A stretch of DNA of 63,165 nucleotides, counting the filler, from Octopus bimaculoides (Eukaryota), in assembly GCF_001194135.2 (NCBI RefSeq). It is 5 parts of 5 records of this genome, joined end to end, with 100 filler letters (N's around TTAATTAATTAA, not from the genome) between each part and the next. Parts side by side here need not be neighbours in the genome. Positions count along the whole stretch, not along the records: positions 20,156 to 35,319 come from NC_068984.1; 4 more parts are not named here. One strand, written 5' to 3'. Position 1 is the first letter of the stretch. Each line of letters begins with the position of its first letter. The translations under genes were made by a program, and so were the position numbers. The notes under the pieces are model-generated. The model was not told where the DNA came from. It saw nothing but the letters and a program-made list of their open reading frames with translations, and did no database searches. Shown here in pieces: positions 20,925 through 35,091 of this stretch.

Positions 20925-20995
20925 CTTAAAAAGTACGGGACTAGCATTGTTGCTCAAAAATATTGGATCACTATATGTTGTACATTCCGTGACAT
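20925..20995 (-). CDS. Candidate Ig-array exon D completing the B2 domain (F-G strands)
   Basis: Good acceptor ttttttgttttaag|AT, weaker donor AAG|gtctat; 71 bp, phase 1-0; (D)VTECTTYSDPIFLSNNASPVLFK supplies the F-strand Cys where A exons have xITCR. Confidence 0.45.
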
Positions 20996-21431
20996 CTTAA
21001 AACAAAAAAGAGACTCCCATGTGAATTACGATGCCACGATGATTATTAAACCGAGTTCTTAAATTTAAAAGTCAACACAACATGCTCATTATTTTTCTTC
21101 ATTTTATTTGAAAGTTATGCATAATATCAAATCAAAATGTATTTCCTGCGTAATTTACGACGAAAATTTGCATCTTCATTTTGATAAGAACATTTGCAAA
21201 TCTTGGAATTGCAAAAACCCTCACTATTGCTCTCCAAGTATAATACTTCTTTTACTCTACTCTTTCTCACATTTAACTTTTCTTGCTGTCAGCCTCTTTC
21301 CCTCTGTTGTTTCAATCTCCAAATCTCCTGTTGGTTTTTCTTATACAAATCAAGTATCAAATTAATTCCCTGCTTCTTTTGAACGAGTGATTTTAAAGTG
21401 AAAAGAAAAAATTATGAAGATGAATTCTCAC

Positions 21432-21638
21432 CTGAATTGTTTTCTCCTAAATTACTTAAGGTCACTTCGGATTGCGATTCTCCATTTACCATCATTTGTG
21501 TCATTCTCGTTGTTATGTCAGTGTTATTAAAGTACCATTTATATTTTATATTTGTTAAATTACTGTTTGTGCGACAAGTGAACGTTATGTTGTTAGCACT
21601 TTGCTTAGTAGTTATTTCAAGTATTGAAAATCTGGGAA
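21432..21638 (-). CDS. Ig-array gene exon B2
   Basis: Acceptor cctcttttttcag|TT, donor TCAG|gtgaga; 207 bp, phase 1-1; (I)PRFSILEITTKQSANNITFTCRTNSNLTNIKYKWYFNNTDITTRMTQMMVNGESQSEVTLSNLGENNS; shares ESQSEVTL with B1. Confidence 0.88.
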
Positions 21639-22853
21639 CTGAAAAAAGAGGAAAACAAAAGGTTAACAAGAATAATTTTGAAAAAAGACACACGCACATA
21701 TATACGTAAACACATGCATATATTCGCACAGACCCACACATGCACACACAATTTGATGCACATGTTTGTCTGTTTATGTGCTTGTAGGGGTTACCGAAGG
21801 AAGTGAGACGGTGTTAAGTGGAGCTGATTCAAAAATGATTTGAAGATTGTAGAGAATAGTGTAGTAATGTTAGAAGCAGAGAGACAGATAAGGAGTAATA
21901 AAGTATTGATGTGCCTTGAGCCCTAAAATAATCCTAATCCTAGGAGTATCACTCTATCAATGTTATACATATGAAGTGATTATTGAAGTTCTTGAGGATT
22001 AGTGTATGTAGAGTATTTTGTAGGTTTAAAGAGGTATTACTTAATGATGCAGGGTGGGTGTGAGGCAAAACTATTTCCTTTATATTCCACTGATAGTATG
22101 GTTGAGTTCGATTCCCGGCAGCGCATCATGATCTTGAACAAGACACTTTATTTCACGTTGTTCCAGTTCATGCAGCTGGCAGAAATGAGTTACACCTGCA
22201 ATTCAAAGGGCCAGTCTTGTCACATTCTATGTCACGTTGAATCTCCCCTATGGAGTGAAAAACCACAGATGATTGACGCCGGTGAAAAAGTCTCAAAGAG
22301 GTGTGTTTCCAAAGAAGTTGTAAAAAGAAAGAAGCCGCAGATTGATGGAGAAAGAGAGAAAGAGAGAAAGAGAGACAGTGAGGGGGAGGAAAGATAAGAG
22401 GAAAGAGGGAGAGACGAAGTGAGAGGGGAATAAAGAGAGAGTAGAATAGAATAGAAATGAGAGGAGGATGAAGAGCGAGAAAGAAATGAAGAGAGGGAGA
22501 GAACCTTATGGTTATGATTTACGTTTGTTTGTATCACATTTGGGATAATACAAGATTTAATTTCATTTAGGAGTAAAATTCAATATTAACATATTTATAA
22601 TTTGGTGCGAAATGATCTGTATTTTAGCGTTGAAGGAGCAGGCAAAGTAATGTTTCGAGTTATGTTGAAGAAAATAGACATCGCAGTTTTAAAAGACTGT
22701 AACACATAGAGAAAAACAAAACAAAAAAGCATGAAGTGGATAAGATTATATTGCAAATAAAATGTGAGGAAGCAGACTGTTATATTATATATTAAAATAA
22801 ATACATAACAACAATATTTAATTACTAACGTAAGTTACACAAAGACTACATAC

Positions 22854-22952
22854 TTTTAAGTAAGTAAACAGTTTTGCTTTTTATGATTCCTCTTTTGTTA
22901 CCGTGTTCAGCATAGCAGAAAATCTTCGTTTCATTTACCATTGTAAAGCGTC
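22854..22952 (-). CDS. Ig-array gene exon C2
   Basis: Not in ORF track. Acceptor tatttattag|GA, donor AAAA|gtatgt; 99 bp, phase 1-1; (G)RFTMVNETKIFCYAEHGNKRGIIKSKTVYLLK; shares KIFCYA and RGIIK with C1. Confidence 0.85.
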
Positions 22953-23159
22953 CTAATAAATATAATTGTAGATATTAGTAGAATTGCTGAATAGTTAAAA
23001 CAAATATTGAACATTATTAAATTCAAGTATCAGATCAATGATAAACAAATCTGGTGATAGTCTAGGGAAGACACTTGACCAAATTCTCCAGATGACAATA
23101 TACTGGTTACTTTCCTCGGTTTTTCCCTTAGATCCATATTCATTTATGGACTCACAAAA

Positions 23160-23812
23160 TACTGCGGAGATGTTTAAATTGCTCCTGAGGTGGCGAGCTG
23201 CCATAATCGTTAGCATGTCATGCAAAATGTTTAGCAGCTTCATATTCTGAGTTCAAATGCCTCTCACGTCGACTTTATCTTTCATCCTTTCAGGATCGAT
23301 AAAATAAGTACCAGCTGAGCAATGGTGGTCGATGTAATCGACTTTACTTAACTCCCAGAAATTGCTGGCTGTGCGCCAAACGTTGAAACGGATTTTAAGC
23401 TGCTCAGAAGGCGGTAAGCAGAATCGTTACCGCGTTGGACAAAATGCTAAGTGGCATTTCTTCCGACTTTACGTTCTGAGTTCAAATTCCCACGAGATCG
23501 ACTTTGCCTCTCATCCTTTGGGGTCGATAAATAGCAGTTGATAAATAGCAATCGACTTATCCCCGCCCGCAAAGTTGCTAGACTTGTGTCAAAATTTGAA
23601 ACCAATTTTAAATTGCTCCAAGGCGGCAAGCTGGTAGAATCGTTAGCATGCCGGGAAAAATGATTAGCAGCATTTCGTCCATCTTCATGTCCTGAGTTCA
23701 AATGCCGCCAAGGTCTACTTCTTTCTTTCATTTTTTCGGGATCGATAAAATATGTAGCAGTTGAAACCTGGTTTCGATGTAATCGACCTAACCCCTCTCC
23801 GAAAGTACTGGC
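23160..23812 (+). mobile_element. Three head-to-tail tRNA-derived SINEs, family C
   Basis: ggcggcgagctggcagaatcgttagc..ctgagttcaaat..gtcgactttgcctttcatcc repeated three times. Other copies near 8905-9025, 27985-28155, 35470-35830, 45245-45440. Confidence 0.8.
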
Positions 23813-33019: not shown

Positions 33020-33118
33020 CTTCTTTTAAGAGGACCACATTTTGCTTTATGATTCCACGTTGGCCGTTATGATTGGCATAACAGAAAATCTTCATGTCTT
33101 GTTGAATTGTGAAATTTC
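33020..33118 (-). CDS. Ig-array gene exon C1 (F-G strands)
   Basis: Not in ORF track. Acceptor tatattccatag|GA, donor GAAG|gttcgt; 99 bp, phase 1-1; (G)NFTIQQDMKIFCYANHNGQRGIIKQNVVLLKE; paralogous to exon C2. Confidence 0.85.
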
Positions 33119-33189
33119 CTATGGAATATAAGTGTAAATTAAGCATGTATTATATAAGGTATCGTATAATTATTGATTTCAGTTGAATA

Positions 33190-33410
33190 TATGCATCTGC
33201 AAGCTTCCATCTCTTCTCCAAGATGAAAATGCAGCTCAAAGGTCGCCGTGTTAACACCGTTGTCGAGGTCCAGAGCAAATCGAAGAGGGTCCGCGACTCG
33301 TTTGCGGAAAACGACTTCCAGGCCGGATTTCAAAAGTGGCAGGAACGCTGGGGCCGGTGTATTGCTGTGCAATGTGATTATTTCAAAGGAGATCATATAT
33401 CATAGATCAA
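33190..33410 (+). mobile_element. mariner (DD34D-type) transposase C-terminal fragment
   Basis: FHLFSKMKMQLKGRR...FQAGFQKWQERWGRCIAVQCDYFKGD. Confidence 0.85.
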
Positions 33411-34359
33411 AGGAGATCATATTTTTAAAATACATATATTCCTTTGTAATAGGAACTAGGCAAAGAAAAATATTCAGAATTACAATATAGATGTTCTGAT
33501 ATCGTTTTGAGGAATATATTACTGACTGTGAATTATAACGATTTGCATTGCCTTCTAACGCTTGTGTTACATCTAATTTGGGCTCACTATTTTTAAGTGA
33601 ACTTGGATGCATAGTGTTCTGTTGTAAACTTGCAATAAACTTACCTTGTATGTCTTCTTCACAATATTCAGTAGTGGATAGTGTTTTAATATAACGATAT
33701 CAGCTTAAAATTTGCAAGGCATGATTAAGGTCAACGTTGGATTCTGATATCTACTACTTACGAGATGCCATTAAGTGACGGGTAGAAACTATATTGTTGG
33801 TTTAAAGTAGAGAAACTTCTGCTCATTAATGCATTCAATAAAGATATTACACGAAAATCTTTACTGATGCGTGTAGAAATATATTTTGCTAACTGGGATT
33901 TATTTTTATATTCCTTCTTCGTTGACTGCTTAAAAACTTTCGAGAAGTGCTATGCTAATGTGACTACTTTGCCTGAGCTTGCAAATAAGATGGAATAATA
34001 TCAAATAATTTTAACCGTAAAGTCATTGTCCCTTACATTACAGTGGTAGTAAAATGGAAGGATTTGTTTCTGTTCATTTATATTTCCATATTAGTTAAGC
34101 TGTGCATTGGGAACGTGGAAACCTAAGAATAACTTGTTCTGATGTATTTTCTGCTGTGTCAGGGAGTTAGTGGGTAACAGAACTTTATGATCACTTGAAA
34201 TTAGTATGCTATTATAGTGAAGAAAGGCTGTATTAAATATATCGTTATTTGATGACGAGTCAGAGATTCGGCTGCTAATATTTGCGATCAAAATTTTGAA
34301 TCACGCAGAGTTTGAAGGAATGATAGGAAGTGAAATACATTTCAAACAGATTGACTTAC

Positions 34360-34593
34360 CTGAATATTTTGCCTTTTGAACACTGTATGATATATTTTTA
34401 TAATGGAAGGGTACCACGGCTACGTAAACATCAGCTTTTGGCAGGTTAGAAACACAGCTATAATTCACCTCAGAATGTAATGATGATACGTTCGGAGAAT
34501 TAAGACTGACTTGTGGAACGGAATCAATAGATATGTTTATGATCCTTTCTTCAACAAAGATGTTGCTATAGAACAATCTGCACGTTATCTTGA
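34360..34593 (-). CDS. Ig-array gene exon A1 (F-G strands of one Ig domain plus first half of the next)
   Basis: Acceptor ctattctacag|TC, donor TCAG|gtaagt; 234 bp, phase 1-1; (V)KITCRLFYSNIFVEERIINISIDSVPQVSLNSPNVSSLHSEVNYSCVSNLPKADVYVAVVPFHYKNISYSVQKAKYS(G); paralogous to exon A2. Confidence 0.85.
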
Positions 34594-34868
34594 CTGTAGA
34601 ATAGAAACGTAGAAAATAGAGGGTTATGAACATAAGCTTTGTCTGAGGCATAGATAGTATGGCTATACAATTAAAGGATTGTATTCTCAAATAATTTGTT
34701 TTGGAACGGTGATTCCCGAAGCAAAGAAAACTATAAATAATAGCCTATAAATTTTGGTTTAAAACACTGATAATTGAAGATAAATGGATACTGATATTTC
34801 AACACGTACTACAAATGTTTCTATGGCATAATAATTTATTCGCAATTCGTGTATTACGCAATCTAAAC

Positions 34869-35091
34869 CCATCAGCCATTTCAACATGTATTTTGAACGA
34901 TCGATAGCAAAATATCGGCAGTCAACTATTTTACTGGAATGGTTTAGAATGGTTGATGAGATGTCTTGTGATTTTGAATAATACCAGTTGCATATGAGTT
35001 AGAATGCTGGTGAATATTTGTAGCATGTATTGTACTGTTATTGGTCATTCACTTTCATTAATCACATATTTGCACAACGTAACATATGTAA
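34869..35091 (-). pseudogene. Decayed B-type Ig exon (B0) upstream of A1
   Basis: Acceptor caatatcag|TT like B1/B2; reads (V)TYVTLCKYVINESE*PITVQY[2-nt loss]CYKYSPAF*LICNWYYSKSQDISSTI...KWLM(G)|gtttag; Cys-to-Trp spacing 13 as in B1/B2; two stops and a frameshift. Confidence 0.5.

What the first reader, a model, noticed from the sequence alone, without database searches (positions are those of the whole stretch)
20925..35091. Hidden minus-strand Ig-superfamily gene built from a tandemly duplicated three-exon module
Seen: six exons with canonical AG/GT ends in the order A1-C1-B1-A2-C2-B2 (234, 99, 210, 237, 99, 207 bp) splice into a stop-free 362-aa chain. The two modules are about 40-50% identical by hand alignment, with Cys, Trp and blocks such as KIFCYA, RGIIK, ESQSEVTL and ADVY kept, which suggests purifying selection. 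The ORF track shows only pieces and misses both C exons. Established: Cys-x12-Trp plus an F-strand Cys is an Ig C2/I-set signature. Inference: an extracellular tandem-Ig protein that I cannot assign to a named family, possibly a lineage-specific surface or immune receptor. No signal peptide or transmembrane exon was found.
Basis: partly seen in the sequence, partly recalled or inferred. Interest (0 to 1): 0.78.

Follow-up and report, generated by a model that had tools for sequence, protein, structure and literature searches.

The report
Ig-repeat exons of octopus adhesion GPCR
The six minus-strand exons are real and encode tandem immunoglobulin-like domains, but they are an internal piece of the extracellular arm of an octopus adhesion G-protein-coupled receptor that public annotation of sister species already holds, not a hidden stand-alone gene.

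Summary
Observation confirmed. Six minus-strand exons (234, 99, 210, 237, 99, 207 nt) have AG/GT ends and phase-1 introns. They splice into a stop-free 361-codon chain, and the two modules are 47% identical.

- Ig-I is a B exon plus the first ~23 residues of the next A exon.
- Ig-II is the rest of the A exon plus the C exon.

The piece is colinear with Octopus sinensis LOC115210917 and equals residues 842-1202 of an O. vulgaris protein named "adhesion G-protein coupled receptor D1-like". In that protein the Ig array is followed by HRM, GAIN/GPS and a secretin-type 7TM domain. An independent Argonauta hians model has the same architecture with three Ig pairs. An O. bimaculoides model supplies the signal peptide.

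The assembly gap lies in a window-specific 2.4 kb repeat insertion inside an intron and touches no exon.

Against O. sinensis, dN/dS is about 0.9. However, the exons have no indels (about 11 expected) and no stops, so the frame is being kept while the protein evolves fast.

Interest is modest: an unusual Ig-rich receptor of a known kind.

The parts
34360..34593 (-). Exon A1 (234 nt, phase 1-1). The first ~23 codons are the F-G strands of the preceding Ig-I domain (KITCRLF...). The rest is the A-D strands of an Ig-II domain (SVPQVSLNS...NYSC...ADVYV...).
   Evidence: Splice sites and frame. Orthologous to O. sinensis exon 14 at L001 38121-38354, 92.7% nt identity.
33020..33118 (-). Exon C1 (99 nt, phase 1-1). 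E-G strands of the Ig-II domain (NFTIQQDMKIFCYANHNGQRGIIKQNVVLLKE).
   Evidence: Orthologue at L001 41851-41949, 94.9% nt identity.
29506..29715 (-). Exon B1 (210 nt, phase 1-1). A-E strands of an Ig-I domain with Cys-x12-Trp (FTCYTNSTAASITYEW) and ESQSEVTLTNL.
   Evidence: Ig_3 at residues 114-186. Orthologue at L001 43093-43302. A third species (L002) keeps 210 nt with no indel and an open frame.
24629..24865 (-). Exon A2 (237 nt, phase 1-1). F-G strands completing the Ig-I domain begun in B1 (AIITCRTF...), then the A-D strands of the next Ig-II domain.
   Evidence: Orthologue at L001 47132-47368, 94.9% nt identity.
22854..22952 (-). Exon C2 (99 nt, phase 1-1; donor AAAA|GTATGT). E-G strands of the second Ig-II domain.
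   Evidence: Orthologue at L001 49124-49222, 96.0% nt identity.
21432..21638 (-). Exon B2 (207 nt, phase 1-1). A-E strands of the next Ig-I domain. Its F-G strands are in the next A exon, which in O. sinensis begins ~47 bp past the point matching the piece's edge (window 20156).
   Evidence: ig at residues 308-360. Orthologue at L001 50425-50631; next A exon at L001 52514, while the piece ends at L001 ~52467.
30113..32482 (.). Window-specific ~2.37 kb repetitive insertion in the C1-to-B1 intron. It contains the assembly gap (30577-30586), two (TA)n runs and a decayed Tc1/mariner-like fragment.
   Evidence: Orthologous alignment to L001 breaks at 42519/42628. Tandem repeats. Weak HTH_23 hit, E 0.003.
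20156..35319 (-). The whole piece is an internal segment (6 of at least 25 coding exons in the O. sinensis model) of the orthologue of O. sinensis LOC115210917 / O. vulgaris 'ADGRD1-like'. It is colinear with L001 37443-52467.
   Evidence: blastn colinearity at 85-89% including introns. Gap-free intron divergence 7.65%.

Best explanation
The six exons are an internal part of a very large octopod adhesion GPCR (class B2) gene.

What they encode. They encode about three and a half Ig-like domains of a long array of alternating Ig-I (Cys...Trp...Cys, ~94 aa) and Ig-II (Cys...Cys, no Trp, ~87 aa) domains. That array forms most of the receptor's N-terminal extracellular arm.

Full-length architecture, assembled from orthologues:
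- signal peptide;
- an N-terminal region of ~380 aa;
- a Thr/Pro-rich linker;
- at least 9 Ig-I/Ig-II pairs in Octopus;
- HRM;
- GAIN with a GPS site (CACTHL|TNFAILM);
- a secretin-type 7TM domain;
- a cytoplasmic tail.

How it most likely works (inferred from the established adhesion-GPCR mechanism, not shown here). The glycosylated Ig stalk projects tens of nanometres from the cell and binds a partner on another cell or in the matrix. The GAIN domain self-cleaves at HL|T. Force or ligand engagement on the N-terminal fragment exposes the tethered agonist (TNFAILM...), which activates the 7TM domain and G-protein signalling.

How the array grew. It grew by tandem duplication of a three-exon (B-A-C) unit. 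The exons are all phase 1-1 and multiples of three, so any gain, loss or skipping of units keeps the frame. The window holds two old, diverged units (47% identical).

How it evolves. The Ig array accumulates amino-acid changes at nearly the neutral rate. Its frame, splice sites and core residues are maintained.
For: Shown here:

1. Exon anatomy and an open spliced frame.

2. A profile of the two B exons finds XP_029635561.1 (O. sinensis, 8 matched stretches, E 5e-135). Its 25-exon structure has the same 234/99/210-type phase-1 exons.

3. All five junction codons predicted in the window encode the same residues as in that model.

4. The piece is colinear with L001 37443-52467, introns included.

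5. The O. vulgaris orthologue P0092 contains the chain at residues 842-1202 with 86.7% identity. It scores 7tm_2 116.7 bits, GPS 59.4, GAIN 58.3 and HRM 35.8, all above the curated cut-offs.

6. Its C-terminal half matches solved ADGRL3 (1e-52), ADGRD1 (4e-42) and ADGRF1 (2e-37).

7. In O. sinensis DNA the HRM and GAIN exons follow directly after the annotated stop, on the same strand. The 'stop' exon reads on into HRM in another frame (L001 68190-68264, 71040-71138, 73585-73785...).

8. An independently annotated Argonauta hians protein has three Ig-I/Ig-II pairs plus HRM, GAIN, GPS and 7TM in one model, with the same linker (...CEKEKKGDVIWPKTL...).

9. O. bimaculoides XP_014775482.1 gives the 5' part, with a hydrophobic signal-like N-terminus.

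10. An AlphaFold2 model of the orthologous module has pLDDT 90 and pTM 0.81, with two beta-sandwich domains. The Foldseek top hits are all tandem Ig pairs.

11. Frame maintenance: 0 gap openings in 1086 exon nt against 97 in 9592 aligned intron nt (about 11 expected, P ~ 2e-5). No stop codon arose, although 94% of random 68-substitution sets create one. Replacements are depleted at paralog-conserved sites (15/168 vs 34/193, Fisher p = 0.02).
Against: 1. The 7TM, GAIN, HRM and signal-peptide exons are not in the 15 kb piece. Continuity in the window's own species is inferred from orthology, not seen.

2. The O. sinensis RefSeq model ends in a stop after EKSCEEET. If that stop is real rather than a 1-nt assembly error, there is an Ig-only secreted product in that species.

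3. The gene models are computational predictions. No transcript reads were examined here. The O. vulgaris model skips B exons in modules 3-5, which would break Ig-I domains, so parts of it are unreliable.

4. Orthologue dN/dS of 0.91 (bootstrap 0.53-1.69) cannot by itself be told from neutrality. One canonical Ig-I cysteine (window residue 314) is Ser in O. sinensis and O. vulgaris.

5. My first search with the spliced peptide returned nothing, although the relatives are in that collection. I cannot explain this false negative.
Confidence: 0.85

Rival explanations
1. A stand-alone secreted (or otherwise anchored) multi-Ig protein gene lies upstream of a separate adhesion GPCR gene. This is what the O. 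sinensis annotation implies, and it is essentially the reader's reading.
For: O. sinensis XP_029635561.1 ends at a TAG after ...ASKGEKSCEEET and has no TM segment. No SP or TM exon is present in the window piece.
Against: The TAG lies inside an exon that continues, one frame over, as LEKLVWPKTLSKKNATVSCPEGFEG, the start of the HRM domain. O. vulgaris reads ACT-GTA-GAA where O. sinensis has ACT-TAG, a 1-nt difference. Argonauta, annotated independently, keeps the same linker in frame and fuses the Ig pairs to HRM-GAIN-7TM. The O. sinensis model also lacks its true 5' end, so it is a partial model in any case.
Confidence: 0.08
2. A decaying locus. On this view the exons are relics of a duplicated Ig array no longer under selection in the window's species, and the open frame is residual.
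For: Against O. sinensis, dN 0.064, dS 0.071 and omega 0.91. Differences by codon position are 27/23/18. Exon divergence (6.35%) is only slightly below gap-free intron divergence (7.65%). The Ig-I cysteine is lost in O. sinensis and O. vulgaris module 7.
Against: There are no indels in 1086 exon nt against 10.1 gap openings per kb in introns (P ~ 2e-5). No stop arose despite 68 coding substitutions (P ~ 0.06). All 12 splice sites are intact in both species. Replacements avoid paralog-conserved positions (p = 0.02). Exon B1 is indel-free and open in a third species. The two modules are 72% identical at the nucleotide level in exons only, while their introns are unalignable.
Confidence: 0.05
3. 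The exons do belong to the adhesion GPCR, but the Ig array is a diversifying recognition surface, a self/non-self or prey/chemotactile receptor. Fast amino-acid change, copy-number change of modules and exon skipping would generate variants.
For: Omega ~0.9 with a maintained frame, implying a mixture of constrained and fast sites. Module number differs: 3 in Argonauta, at least 9 in Octopus, with near-identical young modules (72-88%) in O. sinensis. All exons are phase 1-1. Ritschard et al. 2019 report octopus-specific adhesion GPCR expansions with signatures of positive selection and expression in suckers, skin and axial nerve cord (PMC6408891).
Against: No site has been shown to have omega above 1, and the confidence interval includes both 0.5 and 1.7. 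No isoform data exist. Skipping single exons would cut Ig domains in half. It is unknown whether this gene is in Ritschard's expanded group.
Confidence: 0.2

Closest known systems
O. vulgaris 'adhesion G-protein coupled receptor D1-like' (P0092, 2146 aa), O. sinensis LOC115210917 (XP_029635561.1) and O. bimaculoides LOC106872857 (XP_014775482.1)
   Same: These are orthologues. The window chain equals P0092 residues 842-1202 at 86.7% identity with no gaps. Exon sizes, phases and junction residues are the same, and the introns are colinear with O. sinensis.
   Different: The species differs: ~7.6% intron and 6.4% exon divergence from O. sinensis. That matches the O. bimaculoides-O. sinensis distance in module 1 (87% amino-acid identity), so the window is plausibly O. 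bimaculoides. This is an inference. The window has a 2.4 kb intronic insertion and keeps the Ig-I cysteine that O. sinensis and O. vulgaris have lost in module 7.
Argonauta hians Ahia01_000950700 (P0032)
   Same: Same architecture and linker: Ig-I/Ig-II pairs, HRM, GAIN, GPS (CNCTHLTNFAILM) and 7TM. It is 49% identical over the C-terminal 700 aa.
   Different: Only three Ig pairs are present in the (N-terminally partial) model, against at least nine in Octopus.
Vertebrate adhesion GPCRs with Ig domains (ADGRF5/GPR116 'Ig-Hepta', ADGRA2/3) and the HRM-GAIN-7TM core of latrophilins (ADGRL)
   Same: GAIN/GPS autoproteolytic core, secretin-type 7TM, HRM, and Ig-like domains in the ectodomain. The best solved matches to the orthologue's core are ADGRL3, ADGRD1 and ADGRF1. 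Ig I-set and C1 domains are listed among aGPCR ectodomain modules (PMC13197933).
   Different: From my own knowledge, the vertebrate receptors carry one to a few Ig domains together with SEA, LRR, lectin or olfactomedin modules. Here there are at least 16-18 Ig domains in a regular two-type alternation, and none of those other modules is detected. No one-to-one orthology to a vertebrate subfamily was established.
CEACAM5 (CEA) A/B IgC2 domain pairs
   Same: Alternating ~93 and ~85 aa Ig domains repeated in tandem, with dense N-glycosylation. This is the best sequence match in the PDB for the module profile (1e07 at 6e-11, summed over repeats; 8bw0 A3-B3 at 2.6e-5). 8bw0 is also among the Foldseek hits.
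   Different: Each single domain match is only ~13 bits. There is no IgV N-domain. CEACAMs are vertebrate GPI- or TM-anchored proteins, not GPCRs. The resemblance is at the level of a generic C2/I-set pair, not family membership.
Hemicentin-like giant Ig proteins (e.g. Saccoglossus hemicentin-1-like, P0002)
   Same: Long arrays of I-set/C2 Ig domains. It is the second-best hit of the B-exon profile (9e-24, summed over 10 domains).
   Different: The match is generic Ig similarity. The architecture is not shared (no VWA, G2F or EGF modules tested or seen), and there is no colinear orthology.

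Membership tests
Immunoglobulin superfamily (Ig-like domain) | Sequence match to curated Ig domain models above their cut-offs | tested here: met
   On the window peptide, Ig_3 scores 36.5 bits (cut-off 30) and ig 22.8 bits (cut-off 21.8). The Ig-I unit (B exon plus the start of an A exon) scores Ig_3 33.6 and ig 30.0. The Ig-II units alone have no Pfam Ig hit.
Immunoglobulin superfamily (Ig-like domain) | B-strand Cys, C-strand Trp, F-strand Cys | tested here: met
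   In Ig-I: C133, W146 and C184 of the 361-aa chain, and C314 and W327 in the next unit. Ig-II has the Cys pair (C46/C90, C227/C271) but no Trp.
Immunoglobulin superfamily (Ig-like domain) | Two-sheet beta-sandwich fold | tested here: met
   The AF2 model of the 86%-identical O. sinensis module has pLDDT 90 and pTM 0.81, with 15 strands in two domains. The Foldseek top 50 are almost all tandem Ig pairs; the exception is the growth-hormone receptor, an FnIII-type pair.
Adhesion GPCR (class B2) | Secretin-family 7TM domain (PF00002) | not testable with these tools
   It lies outside the 15 kb piece. In the orthologues it is present: P0092 scores 7tm_2 at 116.7 bits, and P0032 also has it.
Adhesion GPCR (class B2) | GAIN domain with a GPS autoproteolysis motif (HL|T/S) next to TM1 | not testable with these tools
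   It lies outside the piece. Orthologues have GAIN at 58.3 bits and GPS at 59.4 bits, with motifs CACTHLTNFAILM (O. vulgaris) and CNCTHLTNFAILM (Argonauta). Cleavage itself was not tested.
Adhesion GPCR (class B2) | The window exons are orthologous to ectodomain exons of such a receptor | tested here: met
   86.7% identity, gap-free, to P0092 residues 842-1202. The piece is colinear with O. sinensis L001 including introns, and HRM/GAIN exons lie directly downstream in L001.
Adhesion GPCR (class B2) | Ig exons and 7TM exons on one transcript in the window's species | not testable with these tools
   No RNA data and no flanking genome are available for this species. This is inferred from three other octopods.
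ADGRD1/GPR133 subfamily (the name given by NCBI) | Pentraxin/laminin-G-like domain in the ectodomain, and closest 7TM relationship to ADGRD | tested here: not met
   No pentraxin or LamG model hits P0092. The best solved relative of the core is ADGRL3 (1e-52), ahead of ADGRD1 (4e-42). 'D1-like' is a best-hit label, not orthology.
CEACAM family | N-terminal IgV domain followed by A/B IgC2 pairs, with significant per-domain similarity | tested here: not met
   Only summed repeat similarity was found (about 13 bits per domain). No V-set hit appears in the orthologous N-terminal region of P0093.

The most novel reading that the evidence does not exclude
This would be an octopod-specific adhesion GPCR whose ectodomain is a rapidly evolving, copy-number-variable array of Ig pairs: 3 in Argonauta, at least 9 in Octopus, with very young copies in O. 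sinensis. The array is built from frame-neutral phase-1 exons. On this reading it acts as a diversifying contact-recognition receptor, for example in suckers, skin or nerve cord, or in immunity. Module gain and loss, and possibly exon skipping, would tune specificity.
Probability: 0.15. Interest if true: 0.6.

Novelty: new member of a known kind. Interest (0 to 1): 0.3.

Why it matters
For the scan, this shows that the 'hidden Ig gene' is a fragment of a 60-170 kb receptor gene. It should be annotated as such. The existing O. sinensis and O. bimaculoides models are partial pieces of the same gene.

Biologically, adhesion GPCRs with 16 or more Ig domains in a strict two-type alternation were not described in the papers I found. 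Octopus-specific adhesion GPCR expansions have been linked to suckers, skin and the axial nerve cord (PMC6408891). The gene could therefore be a useful case for two questions: how ectodomain arrays grow by exon-unit duplication, and how a fast-evolving adhesion arm is coupled to a conserved GAIN-7TM core. None of this overturns current understanding.

Tried and rejected
1. The search for homologous proteins with the spliced 361-aa peptide returned no hit, although relatives are in the collection. This is an unexplained false negative, so that result should not be read as absence.

I worked around this with exon-exact B1/B2 sequences and with orthologue sub-sequences.

3. Exact look-ups of window ORFs found nothing.

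4. PDB sequence searches:
- The single peptide gave only E 0.05 to antibody constant domains.
- The Ig-II profile gave nothing.
- hhalign of Ig-II against Ig-I was not significant.
Ig-II is therefore called Ig-like on fold evidence only.

5. Pfam on intronic ORFs and on frame translations of the suspected LINE and mariner remnants gave only a weak HTH_23 hit. The transposon labels remain impressions.

6. I looked for a signal-peptide exon in the O. sinensis 5' flank. There were no convincing candidates. The ATG at L001 2208 is out of frame with the adjoining B-type exon.

7. A bacterial promoter/terminator scan was irrelevant to a eukaryotic locus and is disregarded.

8. Only generic Ig similarity was found.

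Full report
**1. What is in the sequence**

The piece (window 20156-35319) is AT-rich (GC about 0.29-0.43). It is full of microsatellites and interspersed repeats and has no long ORFs.

| Exon | Coordinates | Length (nt) |
|---|---|---|
| A1 | 34360-34593 | 234 |
| C1 | 33020-33118 | 99 |
| B1 | 29506-29715 | 210 |
| A2 | 24629-24865 | 237 |
| C2 | 22854-22952 | 99 |
| B2 | 21432-21638 | 207 |

Each follows a pyrimidine tract plus AG and precedes GT. Every exon length is a multiple of three and every intron is phase 1. The joined sequence is open for 361 codons.

The two A-C-B modules align at 47% amino-acid identity, with two single-residue indels and 84 identical columns. Module-to-module tblastn E-values are 4e-15 (A), 2e-13 (B) and 3e-6 (C).

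Same-strand nucleotide similarity between the modules is confined to the exons and a few tens of bases of flank. The remaining matches are repeats in opposite orientation.

**2. The assembly gap**

N 30577-30586 lies in the C1-to-B1 intron, immediately beside a (TA)n run. The O. sinensis orthologue aligns to window 33019-32482 and 30113-29716. The 2.37 kb between those blocks corresponds to only ~110 bp there.

The gap therefore sits in a lineage-specific repetitive insertion. No exon or frame depends on it. In the orthologous gene models C and B exons are spliced directly.

**3. Domain reading**

Pfam finds Ig_3 (36.5 bits) and ig (22.8 bits) above their cut-offs on the spliced chain.

Scoring units separately shows the real domain boundaries:
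- A B exon plus the first ~23 residues of the following A exon (xITCRxF...) makes a complete Ig domain, here called Ig-I. It has Cys, Trp 13 residues later, and a second Cys.
- The rest of the A exon plus the C exon makes a second ~87-residue unit, Ig-II. It has two Cys residues ~44 apart and FCYA, but no Trp. Pfam, the PDB sequence search and hhalign do not recognise it.

An AlphaFold2 model was built for the O. sinensis orthologue of B1+A2+C2, using nine paralogous modules as the alignment. It has pLDDT 90 and pTM 0.81 and shows two beta-sandwich domains. Its Foldseek neighbours are tandem Ig pairs: sDscam Ig1-2, SIRP-gamma, KIR2DL2, RPTP-delta Ig1-2, SYG-1/2, titin and CEACAM5 A3-B3.

So both units are Ig-like. 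The chain carries 16 N-glycosylation sequons.

**4. What gene it belongs to**

A profile of the two B exons, run against 1.84 billion representative proteins, gave one outstanding hit with eight matched stretches (E 5e-135). It is XP_029635561.1, 'uncharacterized protein LOC115210917' of Octopus sinensis.

Its locus (L001) was fetched. The window piece is colinear with L001 37443-52467, introns included. The model has 25 exons: a B-A-C unit repeated eight times, plus a short last exon. Exon sizes and phases are the same as in the window. All five junction codons I predicted encode the same residues as in that model.

Searching with that protein found two further relatives:
- O. vulgaris 'adhesion G-protein coupled receptor D1-like' (P0092, 2146 aa).
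- O. bimaculoides XP_014775482.1 (P0093, 825 aa).

The window chain equals P0092 residues 842-1202 at 86.7% identity with no gaps. P0092 continues from the last Ig-II domain through EKSCEEETVEKLVWPKTLSKKNATVSCPEGFEG into four more elements:
- HRM, 35.8 bits;
- GAIN, 58.3 bits;
- GPS, 59.4 bits, with the motif CACTHLTNFAILM;
- a secretin-type 7TM domain, 116.7 bits.

Its C-terminal half matches solved ADGRL3, ADGRD1 and ADGRF1 at 1e-52 to 2e-37. P0093 supplies a hydrophobic signal-like N-terminus, a ~380-residue N-terminal region and the first Ig pairs.

**5. Is the Ig array really fused to the receptor?**

Three lines of evidence say yes.

First, the TAG that ends the O. sinensis model lies inside an exon. 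Its next frame encodes LEKLVWPKTLSKKNATVSCPEGFEG, the start of HRM. HRM and GAIN exons follow on the same strand at L001 71040, 73585, 76107 and 77464. O. vulgaris differs by one base at that point.

Second, an independently annotated protein of Argonauta hians (P0032) has three Ig-I/Ig-II pairs, the same linker in frame, and HRM, GAIN, GPS (CNCTHLTNFAILM) and 7TM in one model.

Third, the O. sinensis model is also truncated at its 5' end. Its first B exon extends upstream of the annotated ATG to a normal acceptor, and another B-, A- and C-like set lies in the 5' flank.

The stand-alone Ig gene is therefore most likely an annotation artefact. The window itself cannot show this, because the next A exon begins ~47 bp beyond its edge and the 7TM exons lie further away.

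**6. Selection**

Between the two window modules, dN is 0.41 and dS 0.70, with 72% nucleotide identity in exons and unalignable introns.

Between the window and O. sinensis:

| Measure | Value |
|---|---|
| Exon nucleotide identity | 93.6% |
| Amino-acid identity | 86.4% |
| dN | 0.064 |
| dS | 0.071 |
| omega (bootstrap range) | 0.91 (0.53-1.69) |
| Gap-free intron divergence | 7.65% |
| Exon divergence | 6.35% |

Amino-acid change is thus nearly as fast as neutral change. Even so, several features point to a maintained gene:
- The exons have no gap openings in 1086 nt, against 97 in 9592 aligned intron nt (about 11 expected).
- No stop arose, although 94% of simulated sets of 68 substitutions create one.
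- All splice sites are intact in both species.
- Replacements avoid positions conserved between paralogous modules (15/168 vs 34/193, p = 0.02).
- Exon B1 is indel-free and open in a third species.

My reading is a maintained coding sequence with weak or mixed constraint on surface residues. Diversifying selection is possible but not shown.

**7. How it most likely works**

This part is inferred from what is established for adhesion GPCRs (review PMC13197933; my own knowledge of the class).
- The Ig array is a long glycosylated stalk and binding surface.
- The GAIN domain cleaves itself at HL|T.
- Ligand engagement or mechanical pull on the N-terminal fragment exposes the tethered agonist (TNFAILM...), which activates the 7TM domain.

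The array has grown by tandem duplication of a three-exon, frame-neutral unit. There are three pairs in Argonauta and at least nine in Octopus. O. sinensis modules 2-5 are 72-88% identical to each other, whereas the window's two modules are old.

**8. Comparison with known families**

It is an adhesion GPCR by orthology. The 'D1-like' label is not supported as subfamily membership, for two reasons: there is no pentraxin/LamG domain, and ADGRL3 is the best solved match.

The closest sequence resemblance of the Ig pair itself is to CEA/CEACAM5 A/B domain pairs (6e-11 summed; 2.6e-5 for A3-B3). This rests on ~13 bits per domain and is not membership. Hemicentin-like hits are generic.

Ritschard et al. 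2019 described octopus-specific adhesion GPCR expansions with positive selection and sucker, skin and nerve-cord expression. They listed LRR and Death domains as extra domains and did not mention Ig arrays (PMC6408891). Whether this gene belongs to that group was not tested.

**9. Verdict**

The feature is an internal fragment of the ectodomain of an octopod adhesion GPCR that public annotation of sister species already contains. It is a new member of a known kind with an unusually long two-type Ig array. Interest is modest.

Noticed in passing
L001 68169-68264 (O. sinensis CM016862.1): The O. sinensis RefSeq model XP_029635561.1 stops at a TAG. O. vulgaris has one extra base there (ACT-GTA-GAA) and reads on into the HRM domain. 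The next frame in O. sinensis encodes that continuation. This is probably a 1-nt assembly or annotation artefact that splits one receptor gene in two.
   Followed up: partly
L001 2254-2472, 5635-5864, 6308-6436 and 9964-10000: The O. sinensis model is 5'-truncated. Its first B exon extends 37 nt upstream of the annotated ATG to a normal acceptor. A further B-, A- and C-like exon set matching O. bimaculoides P0093 lies in the 5' flank. The A-like part needs two frames, so it is either a frameshift or a different splice.
   Followed up: partly
P0092 residues ~470-840 (O. vulgaris model): The O. vulgaris model joins C exons directly to A exons, and once joins a C exon to another C exon, omitting the B exons of modules 3-5. 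This would leave orphan F-G strands. It is either a prediction artefact in near-identical repeats or a hint of exon skipping allowed by the all-phase-1 structure.
   Followed up: no
window 21545-21547 (minus strand; codon 314 of the spliced chain): The canonical B-strand cysteine of the Ig-I domain in exon B2 (ITFTCRT) is Ser in both O. sinensis and O. vulgaris (ITFTSRT). That domain has therefore lost its disulphide in those species but not in the window's species.
   Followed up: no
window 31357-32100, minus strand: A decayed transposase-like reading frame with a weak HTH_23 match (E 0.003) and a downstream ORF that looks DDE-like to me. It lies inside the window-specific 2.4 kb intronic insertion. 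Probably a Tc1/mariner remnant, but no Pfam transposase model reached significance.
   Followed up: partly
window 25726-27678, minus strand: Several ORFs of 73-160 aa in the B1-to-A2 intron looked to me like pieces of a non-LTR retrotransposon reverse transcriptase. Pfam found nothing, so this is unverified.
   Followed up: partly
window 29098-29246 vs 22091-22247, and 28027-28127 vs 23433-23531: Inverted-orientation repeat copies (74-78% identical) in different introns. They also match several places in the O. sinensis locus. These are interspersed repeats, not part of the module duplication.
   Followed up: no
window 24109-24198, 28891-28957, 25316-25450, 30587-30625, 31025-31082, 35287-35319: Microsatellites: (TG)44, (AC)33, a 17-nt TTTC-rich array and three (TA)n runs. 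One (TA)n run abuts the assembly gap and another abuts the right edge of the piece.
   Followed up: yes
window 34309-35090 vs L001 20443-21218, 26463-27188 and 30203-30895: About 500 bp of intron upstream of exon A1 is 77-78% identical to the introns upstream of the A exons of O. sinensis modules 2-5. So A1's unit shares a more recent duplication history with those young modules than with A2.
   Followed up: no
The word-indexed protein search with the spliced window peptide reported no hit, although 86%-identical proteins are in the same collection. They were found by the exhaustive profile search and by searching with the orthologue.
   Followed up: no
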